Shown here piece by piece: positions 26,329-50,238 of a stretch of DNA of 64,000 nucleotides; the stretch's first letter is position 1; each line of letters begins with the position of its first letter. The stretch covers positions 174,985-238,984 of IMG/VR virus record IMGVR_UViG_3300042922_001182. One strand, given 5' to 3'. A program made the translations under genes and the position numbers. Below the pieces are notes generated by a model that was not told the DNA's origin, did not search any database, and saw only the letters and a list, made by a program, of their open reading frames with translations.

Positions 26329-26341
26329 CGCCGTTCGTCCA

Positions 26342-26349
26342 CATATTAT
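26342..26349 (+). promoter_or_regulatory. Early-type motif CATATTAT
   Basis: Upstream of 26386. Confidence 0.65.
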
Positions 26350-27531: not shown

Positions 27532-27540
27532 GCTAGAGCC

Positions 27541-29331
27541 TTGGAAGACAAAGAGAAGAAGTACGGGGACCTGATCAACCAGGACGCCGCCCGTCGAGTA
27601 CTGCGCGGGATGTTCAACGACTCCGTCCCCGGGGTCGTCGCCGAGCTGCTGCAGAACGCCCAGCGGGCGGGCGCCACCCGCGTGGAGTTCGCCACCTCGG
27701 GGGAGGGTGGGTCCTACGCCGTCTCCTACAGGGACGACGGCCACGGTCTCCTCGGCGGTATGGACGGGCTGCACGCCTTCCTGAAGCTGGCCGAGACCTT
27801 CTTCGAGAACCCCGACGTGTACGACCAGCAGCCCATGGGGGTCGGCATCTACTCCCTCCTGGCCCACCCCGACATCCAGTCGGTGGTCGTCCGCTCCGGG
27901 GGCCTGGCGCTGGAGGTCGACACCCAGCGGTGGTGGGTGGAGCCCGGCTACTCGAAGACCTGGTTCGACCGCGTCCTTGAGTCGTCTGCCGAAGCCGACC
28001 CCGGCCTCAGGCTCAACATCACCTGCAACGCGTCCTTCGCGAAGGCCCTGAAGGACTGCCTCCCACCCTACCGCCCTCAGGCCCTGGAGGCCGAGGGCAG
28101 GGTCCGGGAGGTGCTAAACTTCCCCGCCGTCGGGTACGAGGGCATTCTTTCTGTGTCCCTTGATGGAACCCCTGTCTACACTGGTATCCCCCGCCGCATC
28201 CGAATCCCCGAATCCATCCTGAACTTCGAGTTCAGGGGCTCCATGGTCCGTGCCTCCTGGGTGGACCCGGAGGGCGGTGGCGCTACCCCGTCCTCCGTCG
28301 TGAACTGGTACGGCCAGCTCATCCCGATCGCCTCCAAGCGCCTCCGTAGGCTGCAGTTCTTCATGGACGTGAAGGACGGAAGGCCGCTGAACCCGCTGAC
28401 CCCCACCAGGAAGGGCATCGTCGAGGACGAGGCGTTCACCGAGCTCCTACAGGAGCTGGAGGACAAGCTGTTCGCATTCGTCTGCGACGAGTCCAACCGC
28501 CACCGGATCGGGCCCACCGTGATCGCTGGCCTGTTCACCATCGACGCGGCGAGGGCCCGCCGCCGGTGCCCCTACTACCTCGCCGCCAGGGTGGACAAGG
28601 CGGAGCCGTACCCCACCTCGTTCGAGTCCCTGACCCACACAAGCGATCTCGTGATCCTCTCCTACGACGAGGTGGTCACGGTCGTCGAGCCAGCCGTCCG
28701 GGTGTTCGACCAGGCCACGAAGAAGGAGATCAGCCTGACCATGAAGGGCCTCTCTACCTTCGCAGCCCTGGAGGGGGCCCCGGAGATGGTCATCCCCACC
28801 AGGTTCGCCGACTCCAAGCGGCTCCACAAGCAGGCTGTCTGGTGGGTGGTGGACACCGCCGCAGCTAACAAGGCAGCACGGTTCATCGTCCCTCCCGGCT
28901 TCTGGGCCGTCGGCGGTGTCGACGAGGTCCCCACCAACCTGAAAGCCGTGGAGGGGGAGGTGTTCGCCCTGGAGGTCCCCGCAGCCAGGGAGATCAGGGA
29001 CGCCGAGTGGCTCTGCGGCACCGACGACCCCGTAGGGTTCCTCCAGAGGTGGTCCAACGCGGCCTTCGAGCCCGCAGTGGAGGAGCGCCTGTTCGAAGAC
29101 GAGCTCTCCGACTACAGCGACTCCGTCAAGCGGCTGATCCGCAAGGTGCTCGGGAACCGCATACCCCTCAACTTCACACACGGGGAGCTCCAGCAGTTCT
29201 TCCCCGAGCGTCAGAAGACGAAGATATCCTCCGTGGTGTTCATCCACGGCAACCCGGGGTCGTCGATCCCGACAGAGATAGCAGTCTACTCCTCCGACGG
29301 GCAGGAGGTTCGCCTCACCATCATGGAGTAG
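27541..29331 (+). CDS. GHKL (Hsp90/MORC-like HATPase_c) ATPase protein 1
   Basis: AELLQNAQRAGA (N box), YRDDGHGL (G1), QPMGVGIYSLL (G2). Confidence 0.8.
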   Translation: MEDKEKKYGDLINQDAARRVLRGMFNDSVPGVVAELLQNAQRAGATRVEFATSGEGGSYAVSYRDDGHGLLGGMDGLHAFLKLAETFFENPDVYDQQPMGVGIYSLLAHPDIQSVVVRSGGLALEVDTQRWWVEPGYSKTWFDRVLESSAEADPGLRLNITCNASFAKALKDCLPPYRPQALEAEGRVREVLNFPAVGYEGILSVSLDGTPVYTGIPRRIRIPESILNFEFRGSMVRASWVDPEGGGATPSSVVNWYGQLIPIASKRLRRLQFFMDVKDGRPLNPLTPTRKGIVEDEAFTELLQELEDKLFAFVCDESNRHRIGPTVIAGLFTIDAARARRRCPYYLAARVDKAEPYPTSFESLTHTSDLVILSYDEVVTVVEPAVRVFDQATKKEISLTMKGLSTFAALEGAPEMVIPTRFADSKRLHKQAVWWVVDTAAANKAARFIVPPGFWAVGGVDEVPTNLKAVEGEVFALEVPAAREIRDAEWLCGTDDPVGFLQRWSNAAFEPAVEERLFEDELSDYSDSVKRLIRKVLGNRIPLNFTHGELQQFFPERQKTKISSVVFIHGNPGSSIPTEIAVYSSDGQEVRLTIME

Positions 29332-29356
29332 ACGACACTAGGAAGGAGAAACACCA

Positions 29357-29845
29357 ATGACCGTTAAGAAGGCCGTCCCGCCCAAGCCGAAGGCCGCCGC
29401 CAAGCAGCCCACCCGCATCACCCCGAAGGGGGACCACGCGGCCCTCGCCGTCATCCCCTCGGAGCAGCCGCCCGGCACCGCCCTGCTGTACGCCACCGTC
29501 GGCGGCCAGGAGGACCCGGAGACGGACCACGAGTACGCCGAGGGCGTCATGCTGTTCGTCAACGGCAAGCTCATCATGGAGGACTTCGGCGGCTGCTTCG
29601 CGGCGGCTGGAGTCGGCCTGTGGGCGATGGCCGCGAACCTCTCCGAGGCCCTCGGCGCCGAGATCGTCAAGGAGGAGATCGGCAAGGAGCACGAGGAGCG
29701 GATGGAGAAGTACTCCTACTCCGAGGCCCTGAACGGCCGCTCGGCCGACTCCCTCGACATGGCGATGTGGACCCTCGCCGACCGAGGCCTCATCGACTAC
29801 ACCCCTATGCACCTGCGAGAGCAGGAGAAGGAGATCACCGAATAA
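29357..29845 (+). CDS. Hypothetical protein (single LFxxGxL domain)
   Basis: Shares a motif with the next gene; SD AGGAAGGAG. Confidence 0.7.
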   Translation: MTVKKAVPPKPKAAAKQPTRITPKGDHAALAVIPSEQPPGTALLYATVGGQEDPETDHEYAEGVMLFVNGKLIMEDFGGCFAAAGVGLWAMAANLSEALGAEIVKEEIGKEHEERMEKYSYSEALNGRSADSLDMAMWTLADRGLIDYTPMHLREQEKEITE

Positions 29846-30459
29846 TGAGCGACGCGATCCTCAACCCCACCCACGTCTCCATCAACGACCACGTCCTGGT
29901 CTCGACCGAGGCGGCGGAGTACGCACTCGTCCTGTTCATCGGCGGCCAGCTCGTCACCCACGGCTCCGAGGGCGCCGGGGCCGAGACCGTCCGGCAGCTG
30001 GCCACCCAGCTCGCCTCCCTCTACGGCCAGAACGTGGTCGACCTGAGCTTCGAGGCCGCCCAGGTCGGCTACGAGTTCGACGACATCTACAATGACCAGG
30101 ACGTGCTGTTCAGCACCCTGACGAAGTGGCTGACGTCGCTGCGCACCGGCGAGGAGGAGCCCCGCGTGACGTTCGTCGAGGTCATCAGCCTGAACGACGC
30201 CGACAAGTCGCAGGCCGCCTTCCTCAACGGCCAGCTGGTCGTCTTCGACCGCGACCGCCGCAACCCGGACTTCACGGCCTCCGAGGTCGCCAACCGCATG
30301 GCGACGGCGCTCGGAGTCGGCCTGGAGTCGGTGGAGTGTCCCATCGAGCACATCGCCATGCCCCAGAACGGCGACTACGAGGTGACGGACCTCGTCCAGT
30401 GGGTCCAGATCAACTACTTCCCGGAGCTCCTGGAGGAGGAGTCCGCTCAGCCCGAGTAG
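29845..30459 (+). CDS. Hypothetical acidic protein with two LFxxGQLV repeats
   Basis: TAATG coupling; LFIGGQLV..LATQLASLYG and FLNGQLV..VANRMATALG. Confidence 0.7.
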   Translation: MSDAILNPTHVSINDHVLVSTEAAEYALVLFIGGQLVTHGSEGAGAETVRQLATQLASLYGQNVVDLSFEAAQVGYEFDDIYNDQDVLFSTLTKWLTSLRTGEEEPRVTFVEVISLNDADKSQAAFLNGQLVVFDRDRRNPDFTASEVANRMATALGVGLESVECPIEHIAMPQNGDYEVTDLVQWVQINYFPELLEEESAQPE

Positions 30460-30486
30460 GGCCAGGGCGAACGAGTTTTAATCCGA

Positions 30487-30520
30487 AAGGGTGGGTGCCA
30501 GCAGGCGCCCATTCTTTTTG
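30487..30520 (+). terminator. Intrinsic terminator
   Basis: GGGTGCC/GGCGCCC stem plus T-tract. Confidence 0.55.
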
Positions 30521-30524
30521 TCCA

Positions 30525-30532
30525 CATATTAT
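30525..30532 (+). promoter_or_regulatory. Early-type motif CATATTAT
   Basis: Just after a terminator, upstream of 30568. Confidence 0.65.
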
Positions 30533-30567
30533 AGACGCGAGCCCAACCCAACATAGGAGGTAAGACA

Positions 30568-31029
30568 TTGATCGAAATACGCCAAGAGAGCGAGGCCACC
30601 GCCCTGCTCGCCAACCCCGACCTCAGCCCCGCCATGCGGGCCATGATCGAGGGGTGCGGCAGCATCCAGAAGGCCATCGTCGATGGTCTGTCGGATGGAC
30701 CCTGGACGGTCGAGGACGTCGGCTGGTGCGTCATCATCGAGAACGTAAACGATCTCGCCTCCTTCGAGGCGAGCGGCGAGATCGAAGACGGCATCGTGTG
30801 GACGACGGCCGAGGCCGTCACCTACAACAGCGAGCACCAGTTCTTCAGCATCACCATCATCTACAACAACGACTTCGGCAAGAACTTCTTCGTTCCCTAC
30901 GAGATCCTGGGTAACAACGAGCGCGTCGAGCTGCTGAAGCAGGCCGTCGAATACGAGCGGTCGGCCCTGAAGACGCTCTCGGAGGCCTACGAGATCCTCA
31001 AGGACTCCAAGAAGGACGGCCCCAAGTGA
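30568..31029 (+). CDS. Hypothetical early protein (family shared with 36427)
   Basis: TTG start, SD AGGAGG, CATATTAT at 30525-30532; IIYNNDFGKNFFVP. Confidence 0.7.
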   Translation: MIEIRQESEATALLANPDLSPAMRAMIEGCGSIQKAIVDGLSDGPWTVEDVGWCVIIENVNDLASFEASGEIEDGIVWTTAEAVTYNSEHQFFSITIIYNNDFGKNFFVPYEILGNNERVELLKQAVEYERSALKTLSEAYEILKDSKKDGPK

Positions 31030-31226
31030 GCGCCCCGAACCGCTGCGGGGAGTGCCCCGCCTGCATCCGCTTCAAGCGGGTGCAGCAGCAGATGCTCTCC
31101 AACCTGCCCCTGATCGCCAACGGCATGATGGTCCAGGGGAGCCACCTAACGGACAGCGACGTGGCCTTCTACAACCGCTCCCTAGAGGAGAACCCCTGCG
31201 AAAAGAAAGAAGGTGAGCAACAGTGA
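31026..31226 (+). CDS. Small CxxCxxC protein
   Basis: CGECPAC; GTGA coupling. Confidence 0.55.
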   Translation: MSAPNRCGECPACIRFKRVQQQMLSNLPLIANGMMVQGSHLTDSDVAFYNRSLEENPCEKKEGEQQ

Positions 31227-32047
31227 ACGAGCCCATCAGCACCCAGGACATGCTCCTGGCCGTCTGCACGACCCTCATGTGGAGCATGTTCGGGGGAGGT
31301 CGGAGGCCCCTCACCACCAAGAGCGACGGGAAGGAAGTGGCGTTGCTGTACCTCCCCGAGCGGTTCAGCGGGGTCGAGGCCCTGATCGCCGTGAGGTCGG
31401 AGAACATCGTTGGGAAGGCCCTCCACATCAAGGGGTTCTCCCTGGTCTTCACCGCGACGACGGCCGTCGGTCGCGACGCCCTCATGGACGCCCAGCAGGA
31501 CATGCGGCAGAGGAAGGGCTGGTTCGACTCGCCCAGCGAGCCCATCCGGGCGCTGGCGCAGTGGGGGCTTGAGGGGGAGGACCCCTCGTCCATCACCGTC
31601 GAGCTGGACACCGGCTCCATCACGGAGGCCGTGCACGTCTTCACGGAGGCGATGGTCATCGTCGACAACCTGTTGAAGAGCACGACCGACGCGGCGTGCT
31701 CCTCTTTCCGCGAGAAGGTCAGGCGGGTGGCCGAGGACACCCTCGACGAGATGTCGCACATCGACCGCCCGCTCTTCAACCTGTGCATGCAGGCCGTCGG
31801 CCTGGGGCGCATCCAGACCGTCGTCGACACGACGACCGACAGGGCGGGTGTCGCGATCGCGCCCGTCACCAGGCTCACCGCCCTGGTCCCCTTCCCCTTC
31901 AACACCAACGGCAACAGCGCCCTCTCCCTGAGCATGCTGCTCTCCGCCAGCGCCCCCGAGGAGTGCGAGGAGGCCTTCATGCTCACGTTGAAGGAGGCCA
32001 TCCATACCTCCGTCAACTACAGCCAGGAGGCTGAGACCACGCCCTGA
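31223..32047 (+). CDS. Hypothetical protein, distant paralog of 39518/40851
   Basis: VVDTTTD..LVPFP resembles IVDTSTD..LVPVP of 40851. Confidence 0.6.
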   Translation: MNEPISTQDMLLAVCTTLMWSMFGGGRRPLTTKSDGKEVALLYLPERFSGVEALIAVRSENIVGKALHIKGFSLVFTATTAVGRDALMDAQQDMRQRKGWFDSPSEPIRALAQWGLEGEDPSSITVELDTGSITEAVHVFTEAMVIVDNLLKSTTDAACSSFREKVRRVAEDTLDEMSHIDRPLFNLCMQAVGLGRIQTVVDTTTDRAGVAIAPVTRLTALVPFPFNTNGNSALSLSMLLSASAPEECEEAFMLTLKEAIHTSVNYSQEAETTP

Positions 32048-32056
32048 GGGCGAACT

Positions 32057-32087
32057 GCGGGGGGCCTCGGCCCCCCGTATTTTTTTG
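32057..32087 (+). terminator. Intrinsic terminator
   Basis: GCGGGGGGCC/GGCCCCCCGT plus T-run. Confidence 0.75.
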
Positions 32088-32095
32088 GGCACGGC

Positions 32096-32107
32096 AACAA
32101 TCCCATA
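32096..32107 (+). promoter_or_regulatory. Late-type promoter AACA-N6-TA
   Basis: AACAatcccaTA. Confidence 0.7.
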
Positions 32108-32136
32108 GGCAACTACGTGAGAATTTCCGACTGGGG

Positions 32137-34203
32137 GTGACCGCATTGAAACTAACGGACAGCCAGAGAGAAGACCTGGACAGGCTCTTCGAATTCGTGC
32201 TCACCCTCGTCGTCAAGGACGAGTGGCAGGCCGAGGCCAACGAGACCGTCGAGTCGGCGAGGCTGGCCTACGAGTACATGGACGCCATCCTTGGCGTGGA
32301 CGGCAGGACCGAGGCGGAGAGGCAGCTGCTTATCTCCTCGTACGTCGAGCCCAATCCCTACTACAAGAAGCTGCAGGACGACCACGGCATCTCGCCGTTC
32401 GAGGCCAGGTCGGCCAAGAACTTCCAGATCCTCAGCTACGAGCGATTCATCCTCCCGCAGGCCAGGTACGCCGTCTTCCTGGACGAGTACTACAAGGTGA
32501 TGAGGTACTTCACGGCCGTCCTCTACACGAAGGCGTTCGAGTCCGACCTCCTCTACCCCAACTTCTGCAGGCTCTACATCACGATGATGGCGATCCTCCG
32601 GTACCTGGACGCGTCCATGGACCAGACCGGCAACATCGACTTCCTGAGCTCCAGCGCCCTGGAGAACATGCTCAAGTCCCACGGCCTGGGCATCCTGACC
32701 ACCCTCCCCGCCGTGTACCAGCGGAAGGTGCTGAAGAACCTGACGGAGCTCATCCGATTCAAGGGAACGACGACCGCCATCGAGCGCATCGTGGACCTGT
32801 TCGGCTTCAGCGGCGTCTTCATCTACCGTCACTACCTCTTCAAGGACTACCCGAGAGACGAGGCGGGCGCGATCGTCGACTGGTCCTCCCCCGACATCAG
32901 GTTCCTCAAGATCCGGCACGACGCCGAGGACGTCGAGAGGGAGATCCCCGACGCGGCGTCCGACAGCTACGACTTCTTCACTGGGCGCGATCCCTACTGG
33001 CAGTGCAGCCGCGAGGAGCTGCTGGCGAAGGACTTCAACCTCCTGGCCACCAAGTACATCTCCATCGGCTCGACGCTGGACTTCGTCGGCACGGCCCTTG
33101 AGCTGTCCTACTTCAGGACGCTCATCAACCGCATCGAGACGACGGGCATCCCGGCGCACCTCCAGTTCCTCAACGAGAAGATCTCGGCGGAGGAGATCAA
33201 GGTCTACGATGCCCTCATCGCGGCGCAGATCCTCGTCACGAGGTTCCTCGGCTTCAACGATACCATCATCACGAGCGAGACCGGGGTGGCGACCGTCTAC
33301 GGGTACTCCTTCGACCAGGCCGACAAGTTCGAGATCGACGGGGTCAGCGACGTCGTCGACCCGGCCACGCTGCCGAAGGCCGACGAGCAGGCGTTCATCG
33401 AAACGTACCGGCGAAACAACATCTACCGTAGGGCCTTCGAGAGAATCACAGCAGGGACGCAGGACTACGAGACCTACAAGGAGCTCGCCAGGATCCACAA
33501 GGTGAAGTTCATCGCGCAGTACCAGTCGGCGGTCTTCGACGGCTTCGCGACGTACTCCGCGTACCTCCTCACCAGGAACCCGGACCTGCACAAGTACGTC
33601 GAGGAGGCCCTGGTGCTCACCGAGGACCAGGACGTCGACGTGGAGGCCACGAGGAACATCATCGTCGATCGGCTCTCGGAGATCGTCACCTCGCTGGACA
33701 ACTACCTCGACCTTGAGGACGGCGCGTTGAACATCTTCGCCTCGGCCAACTCGGCCCTGGTGGACCAGATCAAGGTCTACATGCGCCAGGTGGTCCAGCT
33801 GTTCAAGTCCTACACCGTGGACCTGCGCGACTTCGTCGTGACCTACATGGTGAAGGGCGACCCCTTCAACACCGGCATCCACTGGCGCGAGAGGAAGACG
33901 CTCACCTCCGAGCTCTGGAAGGCGGACGACGCCTCGGAGCACGCCTACGACAGGTTCTCCATCATCATCCCCGTACAGAGGGGCACGATCGACCACATGG
34001 TCTTCGAGGACGAGCTCTGGATCACCTCCAGGGTGCGTAAGCGAGACGACGCGGCGTTCAGCGACGACAGGACCATCACCGCCAGCACGGCGAGGGCCGA
34101 CCTGCTGCCGCTCAGCGACGACAGGAAGACCCACGGCTTCTTCCAGAGGGCGGACGGCCTGACGGGAATGCACGACACGTTCACCATCACGGTGATACCA
34201 TAA
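32137..34203 (+). CDS. Putative baseplate wedge/tail protein
   Basis: 688 aa; LKNLTELIRFKGTTTAIERIVDLFG motif typical of wedge (tail-I-like) proteins; late promoter at 32096-32107; exact start uncertain. Confidence 0.55.
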   Translation: MTALKLTDSQREDLDRLFEFVLTLVVKDEWQAEANETVESARLAYEYMDAILGVDGRTEAERQLLISSYVEPNPYYKKLQDDHGISPFEARSAKNFQILSYERFILPQARYAVFLDEYYKVMRYFTAVLYTKAFESDLLYPNFCRLYITMMAILRYLDASMDQTGNIDFLSSSALENMLKSHGLGILTTLPAVYQRKVLKNLTELIRFKGTTTAIERIVDLFGFSGVFIYRHYLFKDYPRDEAGAIVDWSSPDIRFLKIRHDAEDVEREIPDAASDSYDFFTGRDPYWQCSREELLAKDFNLLATKYISIGSTLDFVGTALELSYFRTLINRIETTGIPAHLQFLNEKISAEEIKVYDALIAAQILVTRFLGFNDTIITSETGVATVYGYSFDQADKFEIDGVSDVVDPATLPKADEQAFIETYRRNNIYRRAFERITAGTQDYETYKELARIHKVKFIAQYQSAVFDGFATYSAYLLTRNPDLHKYVEEALVLTEDQDVDVEATRNIIVDRLSEIVTSLDNYLDLEDGALNIFASANSALVDQIKVYMRQVVQLFKSYTVDLRDFVVTYMVKGDPFNTGIHWRERKTLTSELWKADDASEHAYDRFSIIIPVQRGTIDHMVFEDELWITSRVRKRDDAAFSDDRTITASTARADLLPLSDDRKTHGFFQRADGLTGMHDTFTITVIP

Positions 34204-34221
34204 GAAAGGAAGAGTAAAGGG

Positions 34222-35022: not shown

Positions 35023-35036
35023 GCGATCATCAAGCA

Positions 35037-35044
35037 CATATTAT
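35037..35044 (+). promoter_or_regulatory. Early-type motif CATATTAT
   Basis: Upstream of 35102. Confidence 0.6.
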
Positions 35045-35046
35045 AG

Positions 35047-35081
35047 ACCGGCAAGCCTTCGGGCTTGCCGGTTTCCGTTTT
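35047..35081 (+). terminator. Intrinsic terminator or leader hairpin
   Basis: ACCGGCAAGCC TTCG GGCTTGCCGGT plus T-rich tail. Confidence 0.6.
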
Positions 35082-35101
35082 CGCCCTATAGGAGGCTAGA
35101 C

Positions 35102-35578
35102 ATGATCGCAGACATCGCCCGTCAGGACGACGTGGAGACGAAGACCCTGGTCCTCTACAGGGCCGCCATGGACTTCAAGCCCTCGCGGCACAGCATGCTC
35201 ACCCACCTCGTCGGCAAGGTGGTCAAGGATGAGGTTTACTACGTTTCCTACATGGCCCGCATGGCGGCCAAGTGGGGCGTTCAGCTCTACCTCCGCTCCT
35301 CCGAGCTGAAGATCTACAGGATCGAGGCGAGCCACGCCTACGGGTGGAGCCGACAGTACCAGAACTGGGACGAGAAGAAGCTCTGGCGGTCCGGAGAGAA
35401 GATGCCGGAGGACGGATTCACGATCGTCCGCAGCACCCGCGAGGCCTCTCGCGAGGCCCACTGCGAGCTGATCACGCCGCCGGAGCTCATCGTCCCCAAG
35501 ATGGCGATCATCACTTACGATGAGCTCTCCCCCGAAGAGACGAAGCGCTACCTCATTGATGCGTCCTACAGGTGCTAG
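35102..35578 (+). CDS. Hypothetical early protein
   Basis: SD AGGAGG; CATATTAT at 35037-35044. Confidence 0.7.
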   Translation: MIADIARQDDVETKTLVLYRAAMDFKPSRHSMLTHLVGKVVKDEVYYVSYMARMAAKWGVQLYLRSSELKIYRIEASHAYGWSRQYQNWDEKKLWRSGEKMPEDGFTIVRSTREASREAHCELITPPELIVPKMAIITYDELSPEETKRYLIDASYRC

Positions 35579-35695
35579 CAGGGGAAGAACAAATCTTCTG
35601 AAGAGAAAGAAAAAAAACGCGGATCCGTTTGGAACCCGTGGGTTCTGGGTATGAAGGACGGGGCGAGAGGTCGCCCCCACTAGAAAGGAGGAGTC

Positions 35696-36430
35696 TTGCA
35701 GTTCCAGGTGATCAACAAAGGCACGGGTGAGGAGGTCATCCTGATAGGGGTGGAGAGCAGGGAAGAGATCTACGAACGTCTCTTCAAAATGCAGGGATTC
35801 ACTATCAACGGACTCGATGAGAATGGGTTCGACAGCAAGGTCGAGCACTTCCTCAGAAGCACGTCCAAGCTGCACAGGGACGACACCTGGTACCCCGAGG
35901 ACGAGACCCACACCGTCCCCCGGCAGGTGGCGGACGTGGTCTGGCCGAAGGGGGCCAGCGGCCCCTCGGTCCACTACAGGGTGAATGGGTCGGCGTCCGT
36001 CCGGAGGTGCTCCGTGGAGGTCTGGTACGGCTGGGCGTTCTCCTACCGGTGCCGCCCGCGCACGGGACCGCCCCCGGCCCACGCGGCCCCCGACTGGGAC
36101 CCCCTGGTGGACGCCATCGGGGCGGTGATCAACAACTCCTCCCCGCTGATGCGAGAACCGGCGGAGCCGTGGGGAGGCGTTAGCTTCCACACCCTGCTAC
36201 AGATGATCACCGGGAGGCTCCGCTTCCTCCCTAGGGGGACCAAGCAGCACGACCTATGGCCCGGGACCGAGGGCAAGCTCGTCCAGCGCCTCCGCAGCCA
36301 GGAGTTCATCGTCAGGCTGGCGGAGCGCCAGAACATCTACTACCACCTTGACAAGCAGTCGGCCACCTTCATGCGCGTCCCGGGAACGGGACGCCCGATG
36401 AGCCGCGACCAGAGAGGAGAAACAACTTGA
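35696..36430 (+). CDS. Hypothetical protein
   Basis: TTG start after AAAGGAGG. Confidence 0.65.
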   Translation: MQFQVINKGTGEEVILIGVESREEIYERLFKMQGFTINGLDENGFDSKVEHFLRSTSKLHRDDTWYPEDETHTVPRQVADVVWPKGASGPSVHYRVNGSASVRRCSVEVWYGWAFSYRCRPRTGPPPAHAAPDWDPLVDAIGAVINNSSPLMREPAEPWGGVSFHTLLQMITGRLRFLPRGTKQHDLWPGTEGKLVQRLRSQEFIVRLAERQNIYYHLDKQSATFMRVPGTGRPMSRDQRGETT

Positions 36431-36825
36431 TCCGTTTCATGACCCAGGCCCAGCTCGAAGCCGACAGGGAGAACCTGCAGCCGAGCGTCTACACCTCCAT
36501 CGTCCACCGCATCGACGAGCTCGCCACCTTCGACGAAGACCCGGCCTTCCACGGGCCGATCGTCTTCCTGGAGGACAGCGACCCCCTGGACGACCTGACC
36601 GCCTTCGGGGTGAGCAAGGAGCAGCGCGGGCTGTACGGCCCCGCCATCGACGGCGTCCACCTCTACGACAACGGCCTCGTCTGGATGGCCACCTTCCTGG
36701 TCGGCGTCGGCAAGAGCGGCACCGGCTCCGGGGTGGACGTCTTCGTCCACGACACCCACCCGGCCATGAACGAGGCCGTCCGGCAGAACCTGCTGGCGAT
36801 CTACAGGAAGGCAGGCGGTCGATGA
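36427..36825 (+). CDS. Hypothetical protein (family shared with 30568)
   Basis: GPIVFLEDSDPLDDL similar to GWCVIIENVNDL; C-terminal GxxxFV. Confidence 0.65.
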   Translation: MIRFMTQAQLEADRENLQPSVYTSIVHRIDELATFDEDPAFHGPIVFLEDSDPLDDLTAFGVSKEQRGLYGPAIDGVHLYDNGLVWMATFLVGVGKSGTGSGVDVFVHDTHPAMNEAVRQNLLAIYRKAGGR

Positions 36826-37502
36826 AGAAGACCATCGAGTTCGCGCAGGACCTCGGCGACCTGGCCCTTGAGGTGGGGCGCATGGCCCAGGACAAGGAGA
36901 ACGAGCACCGCACGGAGGACGCCAAGATCGCCATCAAGCTGGTCGAGCTCCTCCAGGCCATCGCGGCGGCCCCCACGGGCCGTCTGGAGGCGGCCTTCAA
37001 CAACATGAACGCCAAGGCTGCCCTCAAGGGCGCCTTGGCGCGTTCCAAGCACGCGATCAGGTTCGAGGAGCTCCCCCCGGAGACCACCGGGCTGATGATC
37101 GGCGCTGGTCCGCGCATGTGGACCAGCGGCTCCATGGGGGCCAACATGTACCCCTACCGCTACGACGAGAAGGGCAGATTGGTGCCCGTGTCGGAGGACG
37201 ACCGCTGGATGTTCCAGGACTCCATCGATCACGGTTTCTCCGTCATCAACCTCCTCCCCGTCGGGCCACACGGCCCCGGGATGGCTCGCACCCTGACGAC
37301 CGGGGACCTCCTCTCCGTCCTGGCCCCGGACATCCAGGTCCGCGTCGTCAGCGGGGAGCTTGAGCTCACCTGGGGGCACATGGACCAGAAGGAGGTCTAC
37401 GTCGTGGACCCGTCCGACCTGACCCAGGAGCTCCCCTGGATCCCCGACCCCTACGAGTCGGTGGACAGCTCCAACCCCGCCAAGACCAAGGAGATCACCT
37501 AG
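36822..37502 (+). CDS. Hypothetical protein
   Basis: ATGA coupling, 226 aa. Confidence 0.7.
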   Translation: MKKTIEFAQDLGDLALEVGRMAQDKENEHRTEDAKIAIKLVELLQAIAAAPTGRLEAAFNNMNAKAALKGALARSKHAIRFEELPPETTGLMIGAGPRMWTSGSMGANMYPYRYDEKGRLVPVSEDDRWMFQDSIDHGFSVINLLPVGPHGPGMARTLTTGDLLSVLAPDIQVRVVSGELELTWGHMDQKEVYVVDPSDLTQELPWIPDPYESVDSSNPAKTKEIT

Positions 37503-37503
37503 C

Positions 37504-39468
37504 ATGACGAAGAGCACCAAGGACTACACCAAGCTCGTCAACGAGCACAAGATCCGCAGCGGCATCCGCCGCGCCTTCACCGGCGAGGTCGGCGAGGTCG
37601 TCGCCGAGCTGCTGCAGAACTCCCAGCGGGCAGGTGCCCGCACCGTGGACGCCCGCACCGAGTACGAGGGGGAACCTTCGGTCCCGCAGATGAAGGCGGC
37701 GGCCCCCAAGATGAAGGGGGGACCCATGCCCAAGAGGGCTCCCTCACCCGCGCCCATCCCCAGCGCCGCGAAGAAGGCCGGTAGCGGGGAGTGGAAGGAT
37801 CAGGCCGCCGGACGTTTCTGCTACAGCGACGACGGCCACGGCCTCTCGCGTGGTAAGGACTCTTTCCACGACCTCCTGAGCATGGGGGACAGCGGCTACG
37901 ACCGCCCCGAGGTGGAGCAGCAGCATCCCATGGGCATCGGCATCAACTCCCTTTTGGCCCTGGAGGGCGTCAAGCGTGTGGTCCTCCGCTCCAACGGCCT
38001 CCGCCTGAGCATCGACACCCACTCCTGGTGGGAGGACGAGGGGTACTACACGACCTGGGCGGACCGCGTGGAGGCGGACCCCCTACCGGTGGACGGGCTC
38101 GCCATCGAGGCCGACCTGGCCCCCGGGGTCCTCTGGGAGTTCGAGAAGTGCTTCCTCCGCTACGATCGAGGCGATAGCGCGCTCCTAGCTGTCACCGGCT
38201 ACGGCGAGGTATTCGACGCCCTCCGGATCAACGGGGTTCAGGCCGACACCGCAATCCCCTCCGCCGTCCTTCCGTTCTCGTCGGAGCCGCTGGTCGACAC
38301 CGACTTCGACGGCTCGCGCCTCCGCGTCTGGCACGTGCCGCCGGAGAACCGCTACGACTACTCCAAGAAGAGCCTCGTGAGCTGGTATGGCCAGCTCATT
38401 CCCATTCACATCGAGGCGATGCAGTACCGCCAGCGGTTCTTCTTCCACCTCCAGGTCGGCTCCGGCACCCCCGTCACCCCCAAGAGCCCCACCCGGGACT
38501 CGATCGTGAAGGACGCCAAGTGGGACAAGCTCAACCGGGCCATCGTCGACGCCCTGTTCGCCTCCGCATCCGACGAGTCCAAGGTGGAGACGTGGACCGC
38601 AAAGGCTGTAAAGGCGCTCTACCATATCGACCGCATCCGCGCCTCACGCACCCTCTTCTTCGTGGCGGCCCCCGTCGATGAAGAGGCCATCAAGAAAGCG
38701 CAAACGCACGCGCACGACGGTTCCAGCTACGACGAGCCTCCGGATCTAGAGGTCTACCGCACCAAGGAGATCAGCCAGCTGATGACCATCTCCGGCGTCG
38801 TCCGGGTGATCGGCGGCGAGGGCAAGAAGGCGAAGAAGAAGAAGGAGGAGGAGAAGGGGTTCAAGGCGGAGAACCTCGGCTGCCTGGGCTCCTTCGCGCT
38901 CCCCGAGGGGACGGTCCTCCTGACCGACCTCCAGGTTCCAGACGGCTGGGAGGGTCGCCTGTTCGACCTGGAGGTCTCCCTGGACGCCGAGCCCTTCTTC
39001 GTCTGGGCTGACGCGTCCTTCTTCCGCTCCGCCAGCTGGCGGCTCGTGCCCCGGGACCACGGGACTGCGACGGACTGGAAGCCGCTCGCCAAGGACGCGT
39101 GGTTCCTGAAGGAGGACTTCCAGTACACCTTCGGCGACGTCAAGACCAGCGCGGTGGTGCTCGACGGCAACGTCAAGCGCTTCCTGAACGAATTCGGCGA
39201 CTACCTCATCTACCTCGGCGAGGACGACCAGGACGGCCAGGAGGAGAACCACTCCGACTGCATCGCCACCGCCATCCGAGAGTTCGTCGGCAAGGACGTC
39301 ATCGAGGAGGGCTTCACGATGCACACCCTCTCCATGATGTTCAAGAAGCTCACCGGTAAGAAGCAGGAGGTCGAGAGCATCAAGGTCAATCGCGACAAGG
39401 ACGGCAACATGACCAGCATCGACGTCGTCAGCACCACCGGGACCGCGCAGACCCTGCGCGTCCTTTAG
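37504..39468 (+). CDS. GHKL (Hsp90/MORC-like HATPase_c) ATPase protein 2
   Basis: AELLQNSQRAGA, YSDDGHGL, HPMGIGINSLL, SWYGQLI; paralog of 27541. Confidence 0.8.
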   Translation: MTKSTKDYTKLVNEHKIRSGIRRAFTGEVGEVVAELLQNSQRAGARTVDARTEYEGEPSVPQMKAAAPKMKGGPMPKRAPSPAPIPSAAKKAGSGEWKDQAAGRFCYSDDGHGLSRGKDSFHDLLSMGDSGYDRPEVEQQHPMGIGINSLLALEGVKRVVLRSNGLRLSIDTHSWWEDEGYYTTWADRVEADPLPVDGLAIEADLAPGVLWEFEKCFLRYDRGDSALLAVTGYGEVFDALRINGVQADTAIPSAVLPFSSEPLVDTDFDGSRLRVWHVPPENRYDYSKKSLVSWYGQLIPIHIEAMQYRQRFFFHLQVGSGTPVTPKSPTRDSIVKDAKWDKLNRAIVDALFASASDESKVETWTAKAVKALYHIDRIRASRTLFFVAAPVDEEAIKKAQTHAHDGSSYDEPPDLEVYRTKEISQLMTISGVVRVIGGEGKKAKKKKEEEKGFKAENLGCLGSFALPEGTVLLTDLQVPDGWEGRLFDLEVSLDAEPFFVWADASFFRSASWRLVPRDHGTATDWKPLAKDAWFLKEDFQYTFGDVKTSAVVLDGNVKRFLNEFGDYLIYLGEDDQDGQEENHSDCIATAIREFVGKDVIEEGFTMHTLSMMFKKLTGKKQEVESIKVNRDKDGNMTSIDVVSTTGTAQTLRVL

Positions 39469-39517
39469 CCAATCGAGGGAGGGGCCTGCGCCCCTCCCCC
39501 TTAGAAAAGAGGAAACC

Positions 39518-40897
39518 ATGGAAAACACCGGGCACCGCGAGGTCCAGGGGTACGAGGAGATACGCCAGGAGGCCGCGAAGGCCGACGAGCGCGGTAACGA
39601 GCTCTTTGCCCTCGCCTGGAGGCACCACGCGATCATCGAGGAGAACACGGAGGAGGGGGAGCGGGACTCCATCGGTCCGATCCTGGTCTTCCTCCCCAAG
39701 GGGGAGGAAGACAGCGACGAGGAGCTGGTCCGGATCACCGAGGACACCTTCGAGGAGCTGGTCTATGTCCCTGCGGTCAGGGCCTTCACCGGCATCATCA
39801 TCACCGGTGAGGAAGGCTTCGGGGTCGTGTTCCCCGAGGAGCGCCTGTCGCCGAGGGATGTCGAGCACCTCAAGACCGTCGCGACCGAGTACGGGGACCA
39901 GCAGGTCATCTCCCCCCTGGCGGGCTTCGGCACCCCCGAGGCCCAGGCCAAGGAGGCCCAGGACGTCATGACCCAACACCTGTTCCAGCACGGCGGCTTC
40001 TACGCCGTCGGCCCCGTCTGGACCTTCTCGAACTCTCGTAGCAAGGTCACTTACCGGGACGCCATGATCGCGGAGCGGATGACCCACGTCGTCGCCTGCG
40101 CCATCGAGGCTGGCCTCAAGGAAGGCCGGGAGGAGATCCTCAAGACGTCGGAGGCGCTGGCGCAGGCCCTCGGCTCGTACTCCTCCGTCCTCTCCAACGT
40201 CGCCATGGCCACCTTCTTCGCCCGCTTCCCGGGAGTGACCGGCGATTTCGGCCTCAAGGACAACGAGGCGTTCATCCACCTCGTGCGGAAGGTCGTCGAA
40301 GGCGGTGGCCTCTCTGTGGGGGCCGTGATCTACGCCAAGAGGGAGCTCGCCGAGCGCTCCGAGATGCAGGTCGCCGCCCTCCCGGAGGCGGTGTCGGAGG
40401 CTGGCGGCGCCGTGCCGGAGGACATGGTGCCAGTCTCCGTGACGGGCCTCGGGGCGGGCCACCACCCCCTTGACGAGGACGCGGTCGACATCCTGGAGGA
40501 GGCCGCGACGCTGATCGGCATCTCCGAGGTGATCAGCTCGTACCTGGATCAGCCCATCCTGCTCACCGCCTTCCTGTCAATGGAGCAGCTCCAATCCCTC
40601 AACCAGCGGCTCACCGGCCACATCCAGTGGCTGCAGTCCGGCTTCATGGCGGATGCCGCCGAGGCCCTGAAGGACAAAGACGAGGCCCGGCGTGGGGATC
40701 CCGATCCCATCCTGGTGCTCCAAGGCCCCAGCGGTGCCCCGATGCTCCTGACGTGCAAGTGCGTCCTGGATCGGGCGGGGATGAAGGTCGAGGGCCTCGA
40801 CAAGGTCCCCAATAAGGTCATCTACGAGATCGTCGGCATCGTGACCGACGTTGAAGAGAAAGGAAACGACGACAGTGGATCCGAATCGCAAGAGTAG
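39518..40897 (+). CDS. Hypothetical acidic protein, paralog of 40851
   Basis: VSVTGLGAGHHPL and LLTCKCVLDRAG. Confidence 0.75.
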   Translation: MENTGHREVQGYEEIRQEAAKADERGNELFALAWRHHAIIEENTEEGERDSIGPILVFLPKGEEDSDEELVRITEDTFEELVYVPAVRAFTGIIITGEEGFGVVFPEERLSPRDVEHLKTVATEYGDQQVISPLAGFGTPEAQAKEAQDVMTQHLFQHGGFYAVGPVWTFSNSRSKVTYRDAMIAERMTHVVACAIEAGLKEGREEILKTSEALAQALGSYSSVLSNVAMATFFARFPGVTGDFGLKDNEAFIHLVRKVVEGGGLSVGAVIYAKRELAERSEMQVAALPEAVSEAGGAVPEDMVPVSVTGLGAGHHPLDEDAVDILEEAATLIGISEVISSYLDQPILLTAFLSMEQLQSLNQRLTGHIQWLQSGFMADAAEALKDKDEARRGDPDPILVLQGPSGAPMLLTCKCVLDRAGMKVEGLDKVPNKVIYEIVGIVTDVEEKGNDDSGSESQE

Positions 40898-41780
40898 CAC
40901 CGACCCCTTCGGCAGGCAGCAGTTCGAGGAGCACGCCCGCGACCACGGCGGCTTCTTCATCGCGGGCCAGGTCTGGGACTGGGGCACCAAGAACGAGCAG
41001 GAGCTGTACAAGCTCCTCGCCGTCATGAAGACGCAACTCGTTCGCCTCTTCTCCCTGGCCCGGGTCAACGACAAGAGCCGTGACCTCACCGAGGCCGCCG
41101 CAGTCCTCTCCTCGTCCCTGGCCCTGGCCTCCAGGCTGTCCAGCAGCGCGGCCATCGAGGCCTTCTGCAAGGACAAGACCGCCGAGGAGATCCTGACCGG
41201 TGGGGTTGGCACCGTCATCAAGCAGACCAAGTTCGAAGGCGCCCACGGCGGCATCGAGATCTACGTCTTCATGCTCCCGGAGTTCGCCGAGTCCCTCGGC
41301 ATGGCCGCCGTGGAGCCCCCGCGCCACGTCGCGGATCAGCTCCCTCCCGGGACCGTGCTCGTCTCGGTCACCGGGCGAGGCGCCCTGGACCACAACCCCC
41401 TCCCTGCTCGGGCCCTGCTGCGGTTCATGAGCTCGGACGTCTACCACACCGTGAGGCCCTTCCTCCTCAAGGCCTCCCAGTCCAAGTCCGCCGTGAAGTC
41501 CCTGCTCCAAGGGGACTTCTTCCAGGCCTTCGAGGAGAAGCTTCGCAACGACACGGAGGCCCTCAGGACGGTCCTCTTCTACAAGGCGGTCGACGCCCTC
41601 GGCGTCGGCGTCGGCGAGGAGTCCAGGGACCCCCTCCTCTCCATCGTCGACACCTCGACCGACGCGGTCGCCCTGGTGACCTGCCAGTGCGTCATGGACC
41701 GCAACGGCATCGAGAAGCTCGTCCCCGTCCCGCTGAGCGTCGTCCGGGAGGCCCTGGACGCCGGTCTGGCTGGCGGCTGA
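40851..41780 (+). CDS. Hypothetical protein, paralog of 39518
   Basis: VSVTGRGALDHNPL and LVTCQCVMDRNG; start uncertain. Confidence 0.75.
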   Translation: MKRKETTTVDPNRKSSTDPFGRQQFEEHARDHGGFFIAGQVWDWGTKNEQELYKLLAVMKTQLVRLFSLARVNDKSRDLTEAAAVLSSSLALASRLSSSAAIEAFCKDKTAEEILTGGVGTVIKQTKFEGAHGGIEIYVFMLPEFAESLGMAAVEPPRHVADQLPPGTVLVSVTGRGALDHNPLPARALLRFMSSDVYHTVRPFLLKASQSKSAVKSLLQGDFFQAFEEKLRNDTEALRTVLFYKAVDALGVGVGEESRDPLLSIVDTSTDAVALVTCQCVMDRNGIEKLVPVPLSVVREALDAGLAGG

Positions 41781-41828
41781 ATCTCAAACACCGCTTGAAG
41801 ACACACATTATCGGGTTGGACTCGATAC

Positions 41829-41858
41829 AGGAAAGGCCCTGGCAAGGCCTTTCTTTTT
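41829..41858 (+). terminator. Intrinsic terminator
   Basis: AAAGGCC/GGCCTTT plus T-tract. Confidence 0.55.
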
Positions 41859-41875
41859 CGGACAGGAGAAACGAC

Positions 41876-50235: not shown

Positions 50236-50238
50236 ACC

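What the first reader, a model, noticed from the sequence alone, without database searches (positions are those of the whole stretch)
27541..41780. Duplicated GHKL-ATPase multigene module: candidate undescribed system
Seen: two paralogous ~600-650-aa GHKL ATPases (27541, 37504) share N, G1 and G2 boxes plus WYGQLI and P..PTR..IV.D motifs. Each lies near members of the same two other families: 30568/36427, and 31223/39518/40851 (VSVTG.G..H.PL and L.TC.CV.DR.G clear in the last two, weaker in 31223). Both clusters sit downstream of early-type motifs. Known: GHKL ATPases (Hsp90, MORC, MutL, sacsin) act as chaperones or nucleic-acid clamps, and many occur in defence systems. Inference: a phage-encoded ATPase-plus-partner system for host takeover, anti-defence or phage-phage exclusion, retained twice.
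Basis: partly seen in the sequence, partly recalled or inferred. Interest (0 to 1): 0.68.

Follow-up and report, generated by a model that had tools for sequence, protein, structure and literature searches.

The report
Two stand-alone GHKL ATPases, no module
A soil jumbo phage carries two old, diverged copies of an uncharacterised Hsp90/MORC-like ATPase that are probably made early in infection, but the "partner" genes said to form a duplicated multigene system around them are unrelated to each other or occur only in this genome.

Summary
The window is the last 64 kb of a complete 239-kb soil-metagenome jumbo phage of the AR9/PBS1/phiR1-37 kind.

Confirmed:
- 27541-29331 (A1) and 37504-39468 (A2) are true paralogues (E 2e-52, 32% identity).
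- Both have intact GHKL motifs. The A1 model matches Hsp90/MORC through the transducer domain.
- 39518 and 40851 are tandem paralogues (E 2e-14).

Not confirmed:
- 30568 and 36427 are no more alike than shuffled sequences.
- 31223 is not detectably in the 39518/40851 family.

On the module:
- The two ATPases lie in different transcription units, with late virion genes between them.
- They are not each other's closest relatives (AU p 0.013).
- In 34 other loci that carry the ATPase, no neighbour from this window recurs.
- An exhaustive profile search of 1.84 billion proteins finds 39518/40851 nowhere else.

So the ATPase is a stand-alone gene. Its family is small, patchy and mostly carried on phage-like elements. 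Its 250-residue acidic C-terminal region gives a confident model with no known fold match.

My best reading is an early-expressed ATP-driven dimeric clamp, more likely acting on a protein client than on DNA. The function is inferred, not shown.

The parts
26340..26349 (+). Early-type (virion-RNAP-like) promoter core CACATATTAT, followed by 6N-G. It heads the unit that contains A1.
   Evidence: Motif enrichment is 11 observed versus 0.23 expected. The 6N-G rule holds. AR9 early consensus from PMC5312081.
26386..27531 (+). ORF of 381 aa, unknown function, first gene of the A1 unit. Its stop lies 10 nt before the A1 start.
   Evidence: GC3 0.86. No Pfam, PHROG or PADLOC match. No homologue near other ATPases.
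27541..29331 (+). A1: GHL-type GHKL ATPase, 596 aa. Residues 1-~200 form the Bergerat ATPase domain, ~200-343 the transducer/middle domain, and 343-596 a family-specific acidic beta-rich region.
   Evidence: 16 of 19 family members hit HATPase_c_3. Model pLDDT 84. GRP94 Z 17.6 and MORC2 Z 14.7. C-terminal model pLDDT 91 with no fold match.
29357..29845 (+). ORF of 162 aa, unknown function, in the A1 unit.
   Evidence: GC3 0.93. No family match.
29845..30459 (+). ORF of 204 aa, unknown function, last gene of the A1 unit. Its start overlaps the preceding stop (TAATG).
   Evidence: Sequence read. No family match.
30523..30532 (+). Second early-type promoter core CACATATTAT + 6N-G. It starts a separate unit: 30568, 31026, 31223.
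30568..31029 (+). ORF of 153 aa, unknown function. It is NOT related to 36427.
   Evidence: z 1.2.
31223..32047 (+). ORF of 274 aa, unknown function. Membership in the 39518/40851 family is not supported.
32056..32079 (+). Intrinsic-terminator-like hairpin (10 pairs) plus a T run. It ends the 30568-31223 unit.
32096..32107 (+). Late-type promoter AACA-(6N)-TA, 41 nt upstream of virion gene 32137.
   Evidence: AR9 late consensus AACA-(6N)-TA/G (PMC5312081).
32137..35022 (+). Two virion structural genes (32137-34203 and 34222-35022) lying between the two ATPase clusters.
   Evidence: phrog_20751 E 2.8e-116 and phrog_19418 E 5.3e-50. 27-29% identity to virion proteins of AR9, PBS1 and phiR1-37.
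35035..35044 (+). Third early-type promoter core. It is the nearest such motif upstream of the A2 cluster.
35696..37502 (+). Three tightly packed ORFs (35696-36430, 36427-36825, 36822-37502), stop and start overlapping or adjacent, running into A2. All are of unknown function.
   Evidence: 36822 has weak paralogues elsewhere in the genome.
37504..39468 (+). A2: second GHL-type ATPase, 654 aa. It has a Pro/Ala/Lys-rich insert of about 45 residues between the N box and the G1 box.
   Evidence: Sister to the ATPase of a related jumbo phage, L008 (SH-aLRT 98).
39518..41780 (+). Tandem paralogue pair 39518-40897 (459 aa) and 40851-41780 (309 aa). They are found only in this genome and are separated from A2 by a GC-rich hairpin.
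   Evidence: z 22.8. Word search finds only itself. Exhaustive profile search finds only these two. Atlas gives no usable hit.

Best explanation
A1 and A2 are two anciently diverged copies of one stand-alone gene family. The family is an uncharacterised GHL-type ATPase.

Architecture:
- A GHKL Bergerat ATP-binding domain.
- A transducer/middle domain as in Hsp90, MORC, MutL and type II topoisomerases.
- A family-specific, mostly acidic C-terminal region of about 250 residues with no detectable known fold.

Distribution: the family occurs sporadically, nearly always as one copy, on large phage-like or other mobile elements in soil and sediment bacteria.

In this phage, A1 is the second gene of a unit headed by an AR9-type early (virion RNA polymerase) promoter. 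A2 ends a separate four-gene string that starts 0.65 kb downstream of another such promoter, with gene 35102-35578 in between. Late virion genes lie between the two clusters.

Inferred mechanism: like other GHL ATPases, the protein works as a homodimer. ATP binding closes the two N-terminal domains. The invariant Arg of the PTR motif, in the transducer domain, senses the gamma-phosphate. The C-terminal region holds the dimer together and/or binds the client. The best structural match is Hsp90 (N plus middle domains) and the family is acidic, above all in the C-terminal region. I therefore think the client is more likely a protein, host or phage, than DNA.

What is shown: paralogy, the motifs, the fold, the transcription-unit layout and the lack of conserved partners. 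What is inferred: dimerisation, the role of the Arg, the client and the biological role.

The flanking genes are ordinary lineage-specific early genes, not components of a conserved system.
For: Paralogy and copy number.

GHKL identity:
- N, G1 and G2 residues invariant and the catalytic Glu nearly invariant in 19 members.
- 16 of 19 members hit Pfam HATPase_c_3, best E 8.7e-7.
- A profile hits MutL N-terminal domains in the PDB, E 0.004.

Fold:
- A1 model pLDDT 84.
- GRP94 Z 17.6 over residues 1-441; TRAP1 Z 16.9; MORC2 Z 14.7; SMCHD1 and ParE Z 14.3.
- Foldseek best hit TRAP1, E 1e-9.
- C-terminal 254 residues: pLDDT 91, with best VIA Z 4.3, no Foldseek hit at E<=0.001 and Atlas TM<=0.33.
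- The C-terminal region is acidic in 19 of 19 members, net charge -1 to -27.

Stand-alone nature:
- BLASTP of 18 window ORFs against six-frame ORFs of 34 loci with a family member returns only the ATPases.
- Neighbours that recur elsewhere (sigma54-type activators, ThiF + Prok-E2_D) were not found in this genome.
- Three other genomes each hold one copy.

Patchy distribution:
- 1 of 101 and 5 of 151 related bacterial genomes have a match; two of these contain stop codons.
- Nearly identical copies sit in MAGs assigned to different phyla.

Old divergence: A2 groups with the ATPase of related phage L008 (SH-aLRT 98). The AU test rejects A1+A2 as a clade, p 0.013.

Transcription layout: with the AR9 consensus from PMC5312081. 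Two RNAP beta-like genes lie elsewhere in the genome.
Against: - No experiment and no RNA data exist; the only sequencing run holding the DNA is the source soil metagenome.
- 'Early' rests on similarity of a promoter motif to AR9, a distant relative. A2 has no motif of its own.
- The preference for Hsp90 over MORC or topoisomerase is a Z difference of about 3 on a predicted model. Fold does not give function.
- The N-box sequence is closest to the sacsin/MutL/MORC type, not to Hsp90.
- An acidic C-terminal region does not exclude DNA binding by the mildly basic middle domain (pI about 9 in A1 and A2).
- Small, fast-evolving partners could escape BLASTP at this distance, since the ATPases themselves are only about 30% identical.
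- 39518/40851 could still be a lineage-specific adaptor for A2.
- The family size is not measured. The Atlas suggests more clusters than the 40 or so sequences I analysed.
Confidence: 0.6

Rival explanations
1. A conserved multigene system, made of an ATPase plus members of two partner families, was duplicated as a module and is used for takeover, anti-defence or exclusion.
For: Two ATPase paralogues lie within 10 kb. A paralogue pair sits just downstream of A2. Early-type promoters are nearby.
Against: - The 30568/36427 family does not exist.
- 31223 is not in the 39518/40851 family.
- 39518/40851 flank A2 only and have no relatives anywhere.
- No window neighbour recurs in 34 other loci.
- Related phage L008 places its ATPase among other genes.
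- A1 and 30568/31223 are in separate transcription units, and virion genes separate the two clusters.
- A1 and A2 are not sisters.
- There is no DNA-level duplication.
Confidence: 0.05
2. A functional analogue or very distant member of the rIIA family. rIIA is an early phage protein with an N-terminal GHKL domain and a variable C-terminus that protects the infection from exclusion by prophage or host abortive-infection systems.
For: - rIIA-annotated proteins are among the best BFVD structural hits, E about 4e-8.
- Iyer et al. [quoted passage not shown]
- Probable early expression and a size of about 600-650 aa fit.
- An rIIA N-domain profile finds no rIIA in this genome; its only hit is the topoisomerase, E 0.003.
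Against: - Profile-profile comparison with an rIIA N-domain alignment gives only 50% probability, E 1.7e-4, over 143 columns of the Bergerat domain. Against T4 rIIA alone the probability is 7%.
- No RIIA PHROG is hit by any of 19 members.
- BFVD TM-scores are about 0.3 and are equalled by topoisomerases.
- No rIIB-like gene was detected by family scans.
- The N box differs: ELLQNxQRAGA here versus RExxCNAxDAH in rIIA.
Confidence: 0.12
3. A DNA-directed GHL clamp, MORC/MutL/topoisomerase-like. It would compact, repair, segregate or topologically manage the phage genome during replication.
For: - Sequence-level hits are to HATPase_c_3 and MutL.
- MORC2, SMCHD1 and ParE score Z about 14.
- Elsewhere the gene sits among DNA-metabolism genes: pol III beta, ParB, RNR, UvrD, thymidylate synthases, Mom, DpdA.
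- The middle domain is mildly basic in A1 and A2.
Against: - The proteins are acidic overall (pI about 5) and the C-terminal region is strongly acidic.
- No nuclease, Toprim, MutL_C or known DNA-binding domain was found.
- The phage already has a canonical topoisomerase II large subunit at genome positions 53428-55839.
- DNA-metabolism neighbours are simply what early and middle regions of big phages contain.
Confidence: 0.15
4. A defence or superinfection-exclusion gene of mobile elements. It would be a sacsin/Tiamat-clade GHL sensor lacking a fused nuclease, carried by the phage to exclude competitors.
For: - The N box is sacsin-like; NCBIfam P_loop_sacsin and Pfam SACS give weak hits.
- Tiamat, a sacsin-related GHL ATPase, is an anti-phage protein (bioRxiv 10.64898/2026.09.30.754977).
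- Distribution in bacteria is patchy and some copies are decayed.
- Some contexts sit next to NB-ARC/nSTAND NTPases and a transposase.
Against: - No PADLOC model, Tiamat included, is hit at E<=0.01.
- There is no effector domain.
- Most contexts look like phage replication or early regions rather than defence islands.
Confidence: 0.08

Closest known systems
Hsp90 family (HtpG, GRP94, TRAP1)
   Same: The Bergerat ATPase plus middle/transducer domain superposes best on GRP94 (Z 17.6, 359 residues, rmsd 5.5) and TRAP1 (Z 16.9). The protein is acidic. An invariant Arg in the second domain (PTR) sits where Hsp90 has its catalytic Arg; this is inference, as coordinates were not compared residue by residue.
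   Different: There is no Pfam HSP90 match. The N box is of the sacsin/MutL type. The C-terminal 250 residues are beta-rich with no match to the helical Hsp90 dimerisation domain. Sequence identity is 12-15%.
MORC / SMCHD1 / MutL (Pfam HATPase_c_3 clan)
   Same: This is the only curated sequence family hit: 16 of 19 members, best E 8.7e-7. A profile hits the MutL N-terminal domain at E 0.004. MORC2 scores Z 14.7 and SMCHD1 Z 14.3 over residues 1-329.
   Different: There are no MutL_C, CW, coiled-coil or hinge domains. The scores of A1 and A2 themselves are below Pfam's cut-off. The protein is acidic rather than DNA-binding-like.
T4 rIIA and rIIA-like proteins of large phages
   Same: Phage-borne, probably early, 600-800 aa, with an N-terminal GHKL domain and a lineage-variable C-terminus. 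They are among the top hits in the viral structure library.
   Different: Similarity is confined to the Bergerat domain: hhalign 50% probability over 143 columns. There is no PHROG RIIA hit, no rIIB-like neighbour, and the N-box signature differs.
Tiamat / sacsin-clade GHL ATPases
   Same: A sacsin-like N box (ELLQN..). Occurrence is linked to mobile elements. Tiamat is a single-gene GHL anti-phage protein.
   Different: Tiamat is defined by DUF3684 plus a C-terminal PD-(D/E)xK nuclease; neither is found here. The proteins here are about half its length.

Membership tests
GHKL (Bergerat-fold) ATPase superfamily | N box (E...N), G1 box (DxGxG) and G2 box (glycine-rich ATP lid) in order | tested here: met
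   E35/N39, D65-G67-G69 and Q96-P98-G100-G102 are invariant or nearly so in 19 members, A1 and A2 included. HATPase_c_3 is hit by 16 of 19 members.
GHKL (Bergerat-fold) ATPase superfamily | Bergerat alpha/beta sandwich fold | tested here: met
   The AF2 model (pLDDT 84) matches 28 PDB representatives at Z>=8, all GHKL proteins. ATP binding or hydrolysis itself cannot be tested with these tools.
GHL subclass (gyrase, Hsp90, MutL, MORC type) | Transducer/middle domain directly after the ATPase domain, contributing a conserved basic residue to the active site | tested here: inconclusive
   Fold matches run through residues about 330-441 (GRP94, TRAP1, MORC2, ParE), and R290 of the PTR motif is invariant. 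That R290 reaches the gamma-phosphate is inferred, not measured.
GHL subclass | Constitutive C-terminal dimerisation and ATP-driven N-terminal dimerisation | not tested
   The full-length dimer exceeds the size limit of the complex predictor, and no job was sent. This needs SEC-MALS or a structure.
Hsp90 family proper | Pfam HSP90 signature and the helical C-terminal dimerisation domain | tested here: not met
   No HSP90 Pfam hit for A1, A2 or any family member. The C-terminal model has no PDB match.
rIIA family | Sequence similarity over the rIIA N-terminal ~300 residues, PHROG/annotation as RIIA, and usually an adjacent rIIB | tested here: not met
   hhalign 50% probability, 143 columns only. 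No RIIA PHROG among the hits. No rIIB-like neighbour.
Type II topoisomerase ATPase subunit | GHKL + DNA_gyraseB transducer + Toprim | tested here: not met
   No DNA_gyraseB or Toprim hit in A1 or A2. The genome has a separate canonical topo II large subunit at genome positions 53428-55839.
Tiamat (TmtA) defence protein | GHKL + DUF3684 middle region + PD-(D/E)xK nuclease | tested here: not met
   No PADLOC hit at E<=0.01. No nuclease domain.
Conserved multigene system (as proposed) | The same partner families next to the ATPase in both copies | tested here: not met
   30568/36427 are unrelated; 31223 is not a member of the family; 39518/40851 lie beside A2 only.
Conserved multigene system (as proposed) | Co-occurrence of the partners with the ATPase in other genomes | tested here: not met
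   Only the ATPases match across 34 loci. 39518/40851 have no relatives in 1.84e9 representative proteins. No hits for the ATPases in 50,697 phage or 72,556 plasmid records.

The most novel reading that the evidence does not exclude
The family is a previously unrecognised class of phage-borne Hsp90/sacsin-like molecular clamp. Its new C-terminal fold captures a host or rival-phage protein early in infection, for counter-defence or exclusion. This jumbo phage keeps two specialised versions, and the genome-specific 39518/40851 pair serves as adaptors for A2.
Probability: 0.12. Interest if true: 0.65.

Novelty: new variant of a known kind. Interest (0 to 1): 0.33.

Why it matters
The proposed "system" would have been a new multigene phage weapon, and the evidence says it is not one. 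What remains is more modest.

- It is an uncharacterised GHL ATPase family with intact catalytic motifs and a confidently modelled C-terminal region that matches no known fold.
- It is spread patchily on large phage-like elements across several bacterial phyla.
- It is present twice in one AR9-like jumbo phage, probably as early genes.

GHL ATPases are turning up in immunity (MORC, Tiamat, Hsp90-like defence proteins) and in counter-defence (rIIA). A stand-alone phage version is therefore a reasonable candidate for conflict biology and for structural work.

The window also gives an independent, GC-rich example of AR9-type early and late promoter motifs. That is useful for annotating uncultured jumbo phages.

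Tried and rejected
1. Partner families.
- BLASTP, phmmer --max, a two-sequence profile and shuffle tests rejected 30568/36427 and 31223.
- I also compared the true operon mates of A1 (26386, 29357, 29845) with those of A2 (35696, 36427, 36822). No similarity.

2. Co-occurrence.
- I examined 34 loci from metagenomes, IMG/VR and GTDB genomes. Only the ATPase is shared.
- Neighbours that recur elsewhere (sigma54 activators, ThiF + Prok-E2_D) were not found in this genome.

3. Cultured phages and plasmids. tblastn of A1, A2 and P0021 gave no match.

4. Closer relatives of this phage. A search of IMG/VR with the virion protein found none.

5. rIIA hypothesis. Similarity is limited to the generic GHKL domain.

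6. Defence libraries. PADLOC and NCBIfam gave nothing beyond weak N-box hits.

7. Fold of the C-terminal region. No match with VIA wide, Foldseek PDB or the Atlas. This does not prove the fold is new.

8. 39518/40851. Word search, exhaustive profile search and the Atlas gave nothing.

9. Expression. Only the source soil DNA run holds the sequence and there is no RNA run.

10. Complex prediction was not sent. I do not claim that any pair binds, and ORFan partners without alignments would make a negative result meaningless.

11. Two calls (117, 118) failed on a handle format and were repeated correctly.

Full report
SETTING

The window is bases 174,985-238,984 of a 238,984-bp IMG/VR virus record with direct terminal repeats. 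CheckV rates it complete.
- It is 60-69% G+C.
- The only public run that holds it is a soil metagenome, probably its source.
- Real genes stand out by GC3 of about 0.9, and nearly all lie on the + strand.
- The virion gene at 32137-34203 is 27-29% identical to virion proteins of Bacillus phages AR9 and PBS1, Yersinia phage phiR1-37 and Staphylococcus jumbo phages. It hits phrog_20751 at E 3e-116.
- The genome has two RNA-polymerase beta-like genes and a beta'-like fragment.
- It also has a canonical topoisomerase II large subunit at genome positions 53428-55839.

So this is an uncultured, GC-rich jumbo phage of the AR9/phiKZ-type transcription scheme.

The two ATPases are true paralogues.
- A1 (27541-29331, 596 aa) and A2 (37504-39468, 654 aa) align at E 2e-52, 32% identity over about 450 residues.
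- They are the only two copies in the genome.
These are the N box ELLQN[AS]QRAGA, DDGHGL, Q.PMG.G, WYGQLI and P..PTR..IV.D.

39518-40897 and 40851-41780 are also real paralogues (E 2e-14; z 22.8 against shuffles). They carry the two motifs quoted.

The other family claims fail.
- 30568 and 36427 give no BLAST alignment. Their local-alignment score is reached by 140 of 1000 shuffles. Neither finds the other with phmmer at maximum sensitivity.
- 31223 scores E 0.058 against 40851, with z 2.2 against 40851 and z 0.7 against 39518.
- A profile of 39518+40851 does not find 31223.
- At DNA level only 95 nt over the N box are alike (74% identity).

LAYOUT

The "early-type motif" is real.
- CAYATATTAT with at most 1 mismatch occurs 11 times in the window against 0.23 expected.
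- Ten are on the gene strand and intergenic. Nine of those ten are followed by six bases and a G.
- This is the core of the experimentally mapped AR9 early (virion RNA polymerase) promoter, AAATATATATTAT-(6N)-G (PMC5312081).
- The AR9 late motif AACA-(6N)-TA occurs 41 nt upstream of virion gene 32137.

Reading these with the terminator-like hairpin at 32056-32079 and the gene spacing, the region divides as follows.
- Early promoter 26340, then 26386, A1, 29357 and 29845.
- Early promoter 30523, then 30568, 31026 and 31223, then the terminator.
- Late promoter 32096, then two virion genes.
- Early promoter 35035, then 35102.
- A string with overlapping or adjacent stops and starts: 35696, 36427, 36822, A2.
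- A GC-rich hairpin, then 39518 and 40851.

Three things follow.
- A1 is not co-transcribed with its supposed partners.
- The two clusters are separated by late structural genes.
- The real operon mates of A1 and A2 are unrelated to each other.

That the promoters are early is an inference from AR9. No RNA data exist for this phage.

THE ATPASE FAMILY

Sequence evidence:
- A1 alone gives only sub-threshold Pfam hits: HATPase_c_3 E 0.013 and SACS E 0.049. A2 gives none.
- The word search found 20 metagenomic relatives at 26-36% identity over the full length.
- 16 of 19 aligned members hit HATPase_c_3, best E 8.7e-7. Five hit the unannotated phrog_6203.

Structure evidence:
- The AlphaFold model of A1 built on this alignment is good: pLDDT 84, pTM 0.73.
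- Its first 330-440 residues superpose on GHL ATPases including their second (transducer/middle) domain.
- The scores are GRP94 Z 17.6, TRAP1 16.9, MORC2 14.7, SMCHD1 14.3, ParE 14.3, T6 topoisomerase II 13.3 and MutL 11.7.
- Foldseek agrees, with TRAP1 at E 1e-9.
- Residues 343-596 modelled alone reach pLDDT 91. Their best VIA Z is 4.3, Foldseek gives no hit at E<=0.001, and Atlas TM-scores are at most 0.33.
- This region is acidic in every member; net charge is -11 in A1 and -15 in A2. Whole-protein pI is about 5.

The invariant Arg of PTR lies in the transducer domain. Other GHL enzymes supply a Lys or Arg there to the gamma-phosphate, for example the QTK loop of GyrB and the catalytic Arg of Hsp90. 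This is established knowledge of the superfamily, but its application here is inference.

DOES A MODULE EXIST ELSEWHERE?

I collected 34 further loci with a family member.
- They come from metagenome contigs up to 143 kb, one complete 169-kb IMG/VR phage, and 26 GTDB genomes.
- The GTDB genomes include Pyrinomonadaceae and other Acidobacteriota, Heliomicrobium, cyanobacteria, Ktedonobacterales, a planctomycete, a gammaproteobacterial MAG and the isolate Herpetosiphon geysericola DSM 7119.
- BLASTP of 18 window ORFs (26386-42821) against all six-frame ORFs within 10 kb of the ATPase (less where the contig ends) returned only the ATPases.

One locus, L008/L009, belongs to a related jumbo phage.
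- Four other genes are 37-52% identical to genes of this genome.
- Its A2-type ATPase sits between different genes, including a 2OG-Fe(II) oxygenase.
- No homologue of 35696-36822 or 39518/40851 is nearby.

Other points:
- The 39518/40851 profile, run exhaustively over 1.84 billion representative proteins, finds only the two window proteins. The word search and the Atlas agree.
- Genes that do recur near the ATPase elsewhere are sigma54-type AAA+ activators (9 loci) and ThiF + Prok-E2_D pairs. Neither was found in this genome.
- Cultured phages (50,697 records) and plasmids (72,556 records) hold no detectable homologue.
- In bacteria the gene is patchy: 1 of 101 genomes sampled in the class of Herpetosiphon and 5 of 151 in the family of one Acidobacteriota host. 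Two of those copies contain stop codons.
- Near-identical copies appear in MAGs assigned to different phyla. This points to mobile or viral contigs binned by mistake.
- Contexts are those of large phage-like elements: pol III beta, ParB, RNR, UvrD, ThyA/Thy1, CTP synthase, Mom, DpdA and actin-like ALP_N.

HOW OLD IS THE DUPLICATION?

In a maximum-likelihood tree of 41 members, A2 is sister to the L008 phage protein (SH-aLRT 98). A1 lies elsewhere with weak support. Forcing A1 and A2 together costs 28 log-likelihood units, AU p 0.013. Long branches call for caution. Even so, the two copies were either duplicated before these phage lineages split or acquired separately. "Retained twice" holds for the ATPase only.

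COMPARISON WITH KNOWN FAMILIES

The protein is a member of the GHKL superfamily and, by fold, of the GHL subclass. It is not a detectable member of any named family within that subclass.
- Hsp90: no HSP90 Pfam signature and a different C-terminus.
- Type II topoisomerase: no Toprim, and the phage has its own topoisomerase.
- MutL: no MutL_C domain.
- Tiamat: no nuclease and no PADLOC hit.
- rIIA: profile-profile similarity is limited to 143 columns of the Bergerat domain at 50% probability, with no RIIA PHROG hit.

rIIA remains the nearest known phage analogue in lifestyle: early, GHKL plus a variable C-terminus, and involved in conflict (PMC7824862).

VERDICT

The duplicated multigene module is not real as a system. 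The duplicated ATPase is real. It belongs to an uncharacterised, sporadically distributed, stand-alone GHL family with an unmatched C-terminal region.

I commit to an early-expressed ATP-driven dimeric clamp, more probably acting on a protein client than on DNA.
- Confidence is about 0.8 for identity and stand-alone status.
- Confidence is about 0.35 for the protein-client mechanism.
- Overall confidence is 0.6.

Interest is moderate to low. This is a candidate for structural and conflict-biology follow-up, not a new system.

Noticed in passing
window 6780, 21791, 22995, 61281(-); genome 3782, 87900, 127802, 140624: A subset of the early-type promoters carries a second conserved element, AAA[CG]CGAATCTA, about 13 nt upstream of the CAYATATTAT core. 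The promoters in front of the A1, 30568 and 35102 units lack it. There may be two promoter classes, for example immediate-early versus delayed-early.
   Followed up: partly
window 32096-32107: An AR9-type late promoter motif, AACA-(6N)-TA, lies 41 nt upstream of virion gene 32137. It is one of only two matches in 17 kb. AR9 promoter logic seems to be conserved in a phage of 64% G+C.
   Followed up: partly
genome G000:C1:7965-14876 (minus strand, outside the window): Three tandem paralogues of about 700-740 aa each, 34-39% identical (E down to 1e-130). This is the largest paralogue family in the genome. Function was not examined.
   Followed up: no
window 24490-25233(-) and 25597-26310(-); 54872-55264 and 55265-55636; 49624-50235 and 50236-50883: Further tandem paralogue pairs (E 2e-29, 2e-18 and 3e-5). 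Tandem duplication of small genes is common in this genome, so the 39518/40851 pair is not unusual.
   Followed up: no
window 36822-37502: The gene just upstream of A2 has weak paralogues elsewhere in the genome: 46334-46969 (E 6.5e-6), 47072-47848 and 102846-104228.
   Followed up: partly
L025 vs L036; L032 vs L033; L019/L020/L021 vs L030: Nearly identical ATPase genes, with tree branch lengths of 0.02-0.1, occur in MAGs assigned to different phyla: Blastocatellia and Heliobacteriaceae; Pyrinomonadaceae and Tepidisphaeraceae; Acidobacteriota, Heliomicrobium and Gammaproteobacteria. These contigs are probably phage or mobile-element DNA binned wrongly.
   Followed up: partly
L006, L011, L041 and the 56-kb contig of P0025: A ThiF (E1-like) plus Prok-E2_D (E2-like) gene pair recurs within 2-8 kb of the ATPase on phage-like contigs, often together with sigma54-type activators. 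This may be a ubiquitin-like conjugation module of large uncultured phages. It was not found in this genome.
   Followed up: partly
L007:9293-11722 (IMG/VR contig of 168,796 bp with terminal repeats): In this complete phage the ATPase lies in an 810-aa open frame, with about 235 extra residues at the N-terminus (a possible fusion). The extension was not analysed.
   Followed up: no
window 37666-37800 (A2 residues ~55-100): A2 has a Pro/Ala/Lys-rich low-complexity insert between the N box and the G1 box. P0016, P0017 and P0019 have inserts at the same position, so this is a tolerated insertion site in the ATP-binding domain.
   Followed up: no
window 31026-31226: A 66-aa ORF with a CxxCxxC cluster and one further Cys near the C-terminus lies between 30568 and 31223, overlapping both by 4 nt. 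It may be a small metal-binding protein.
   Followed up: no
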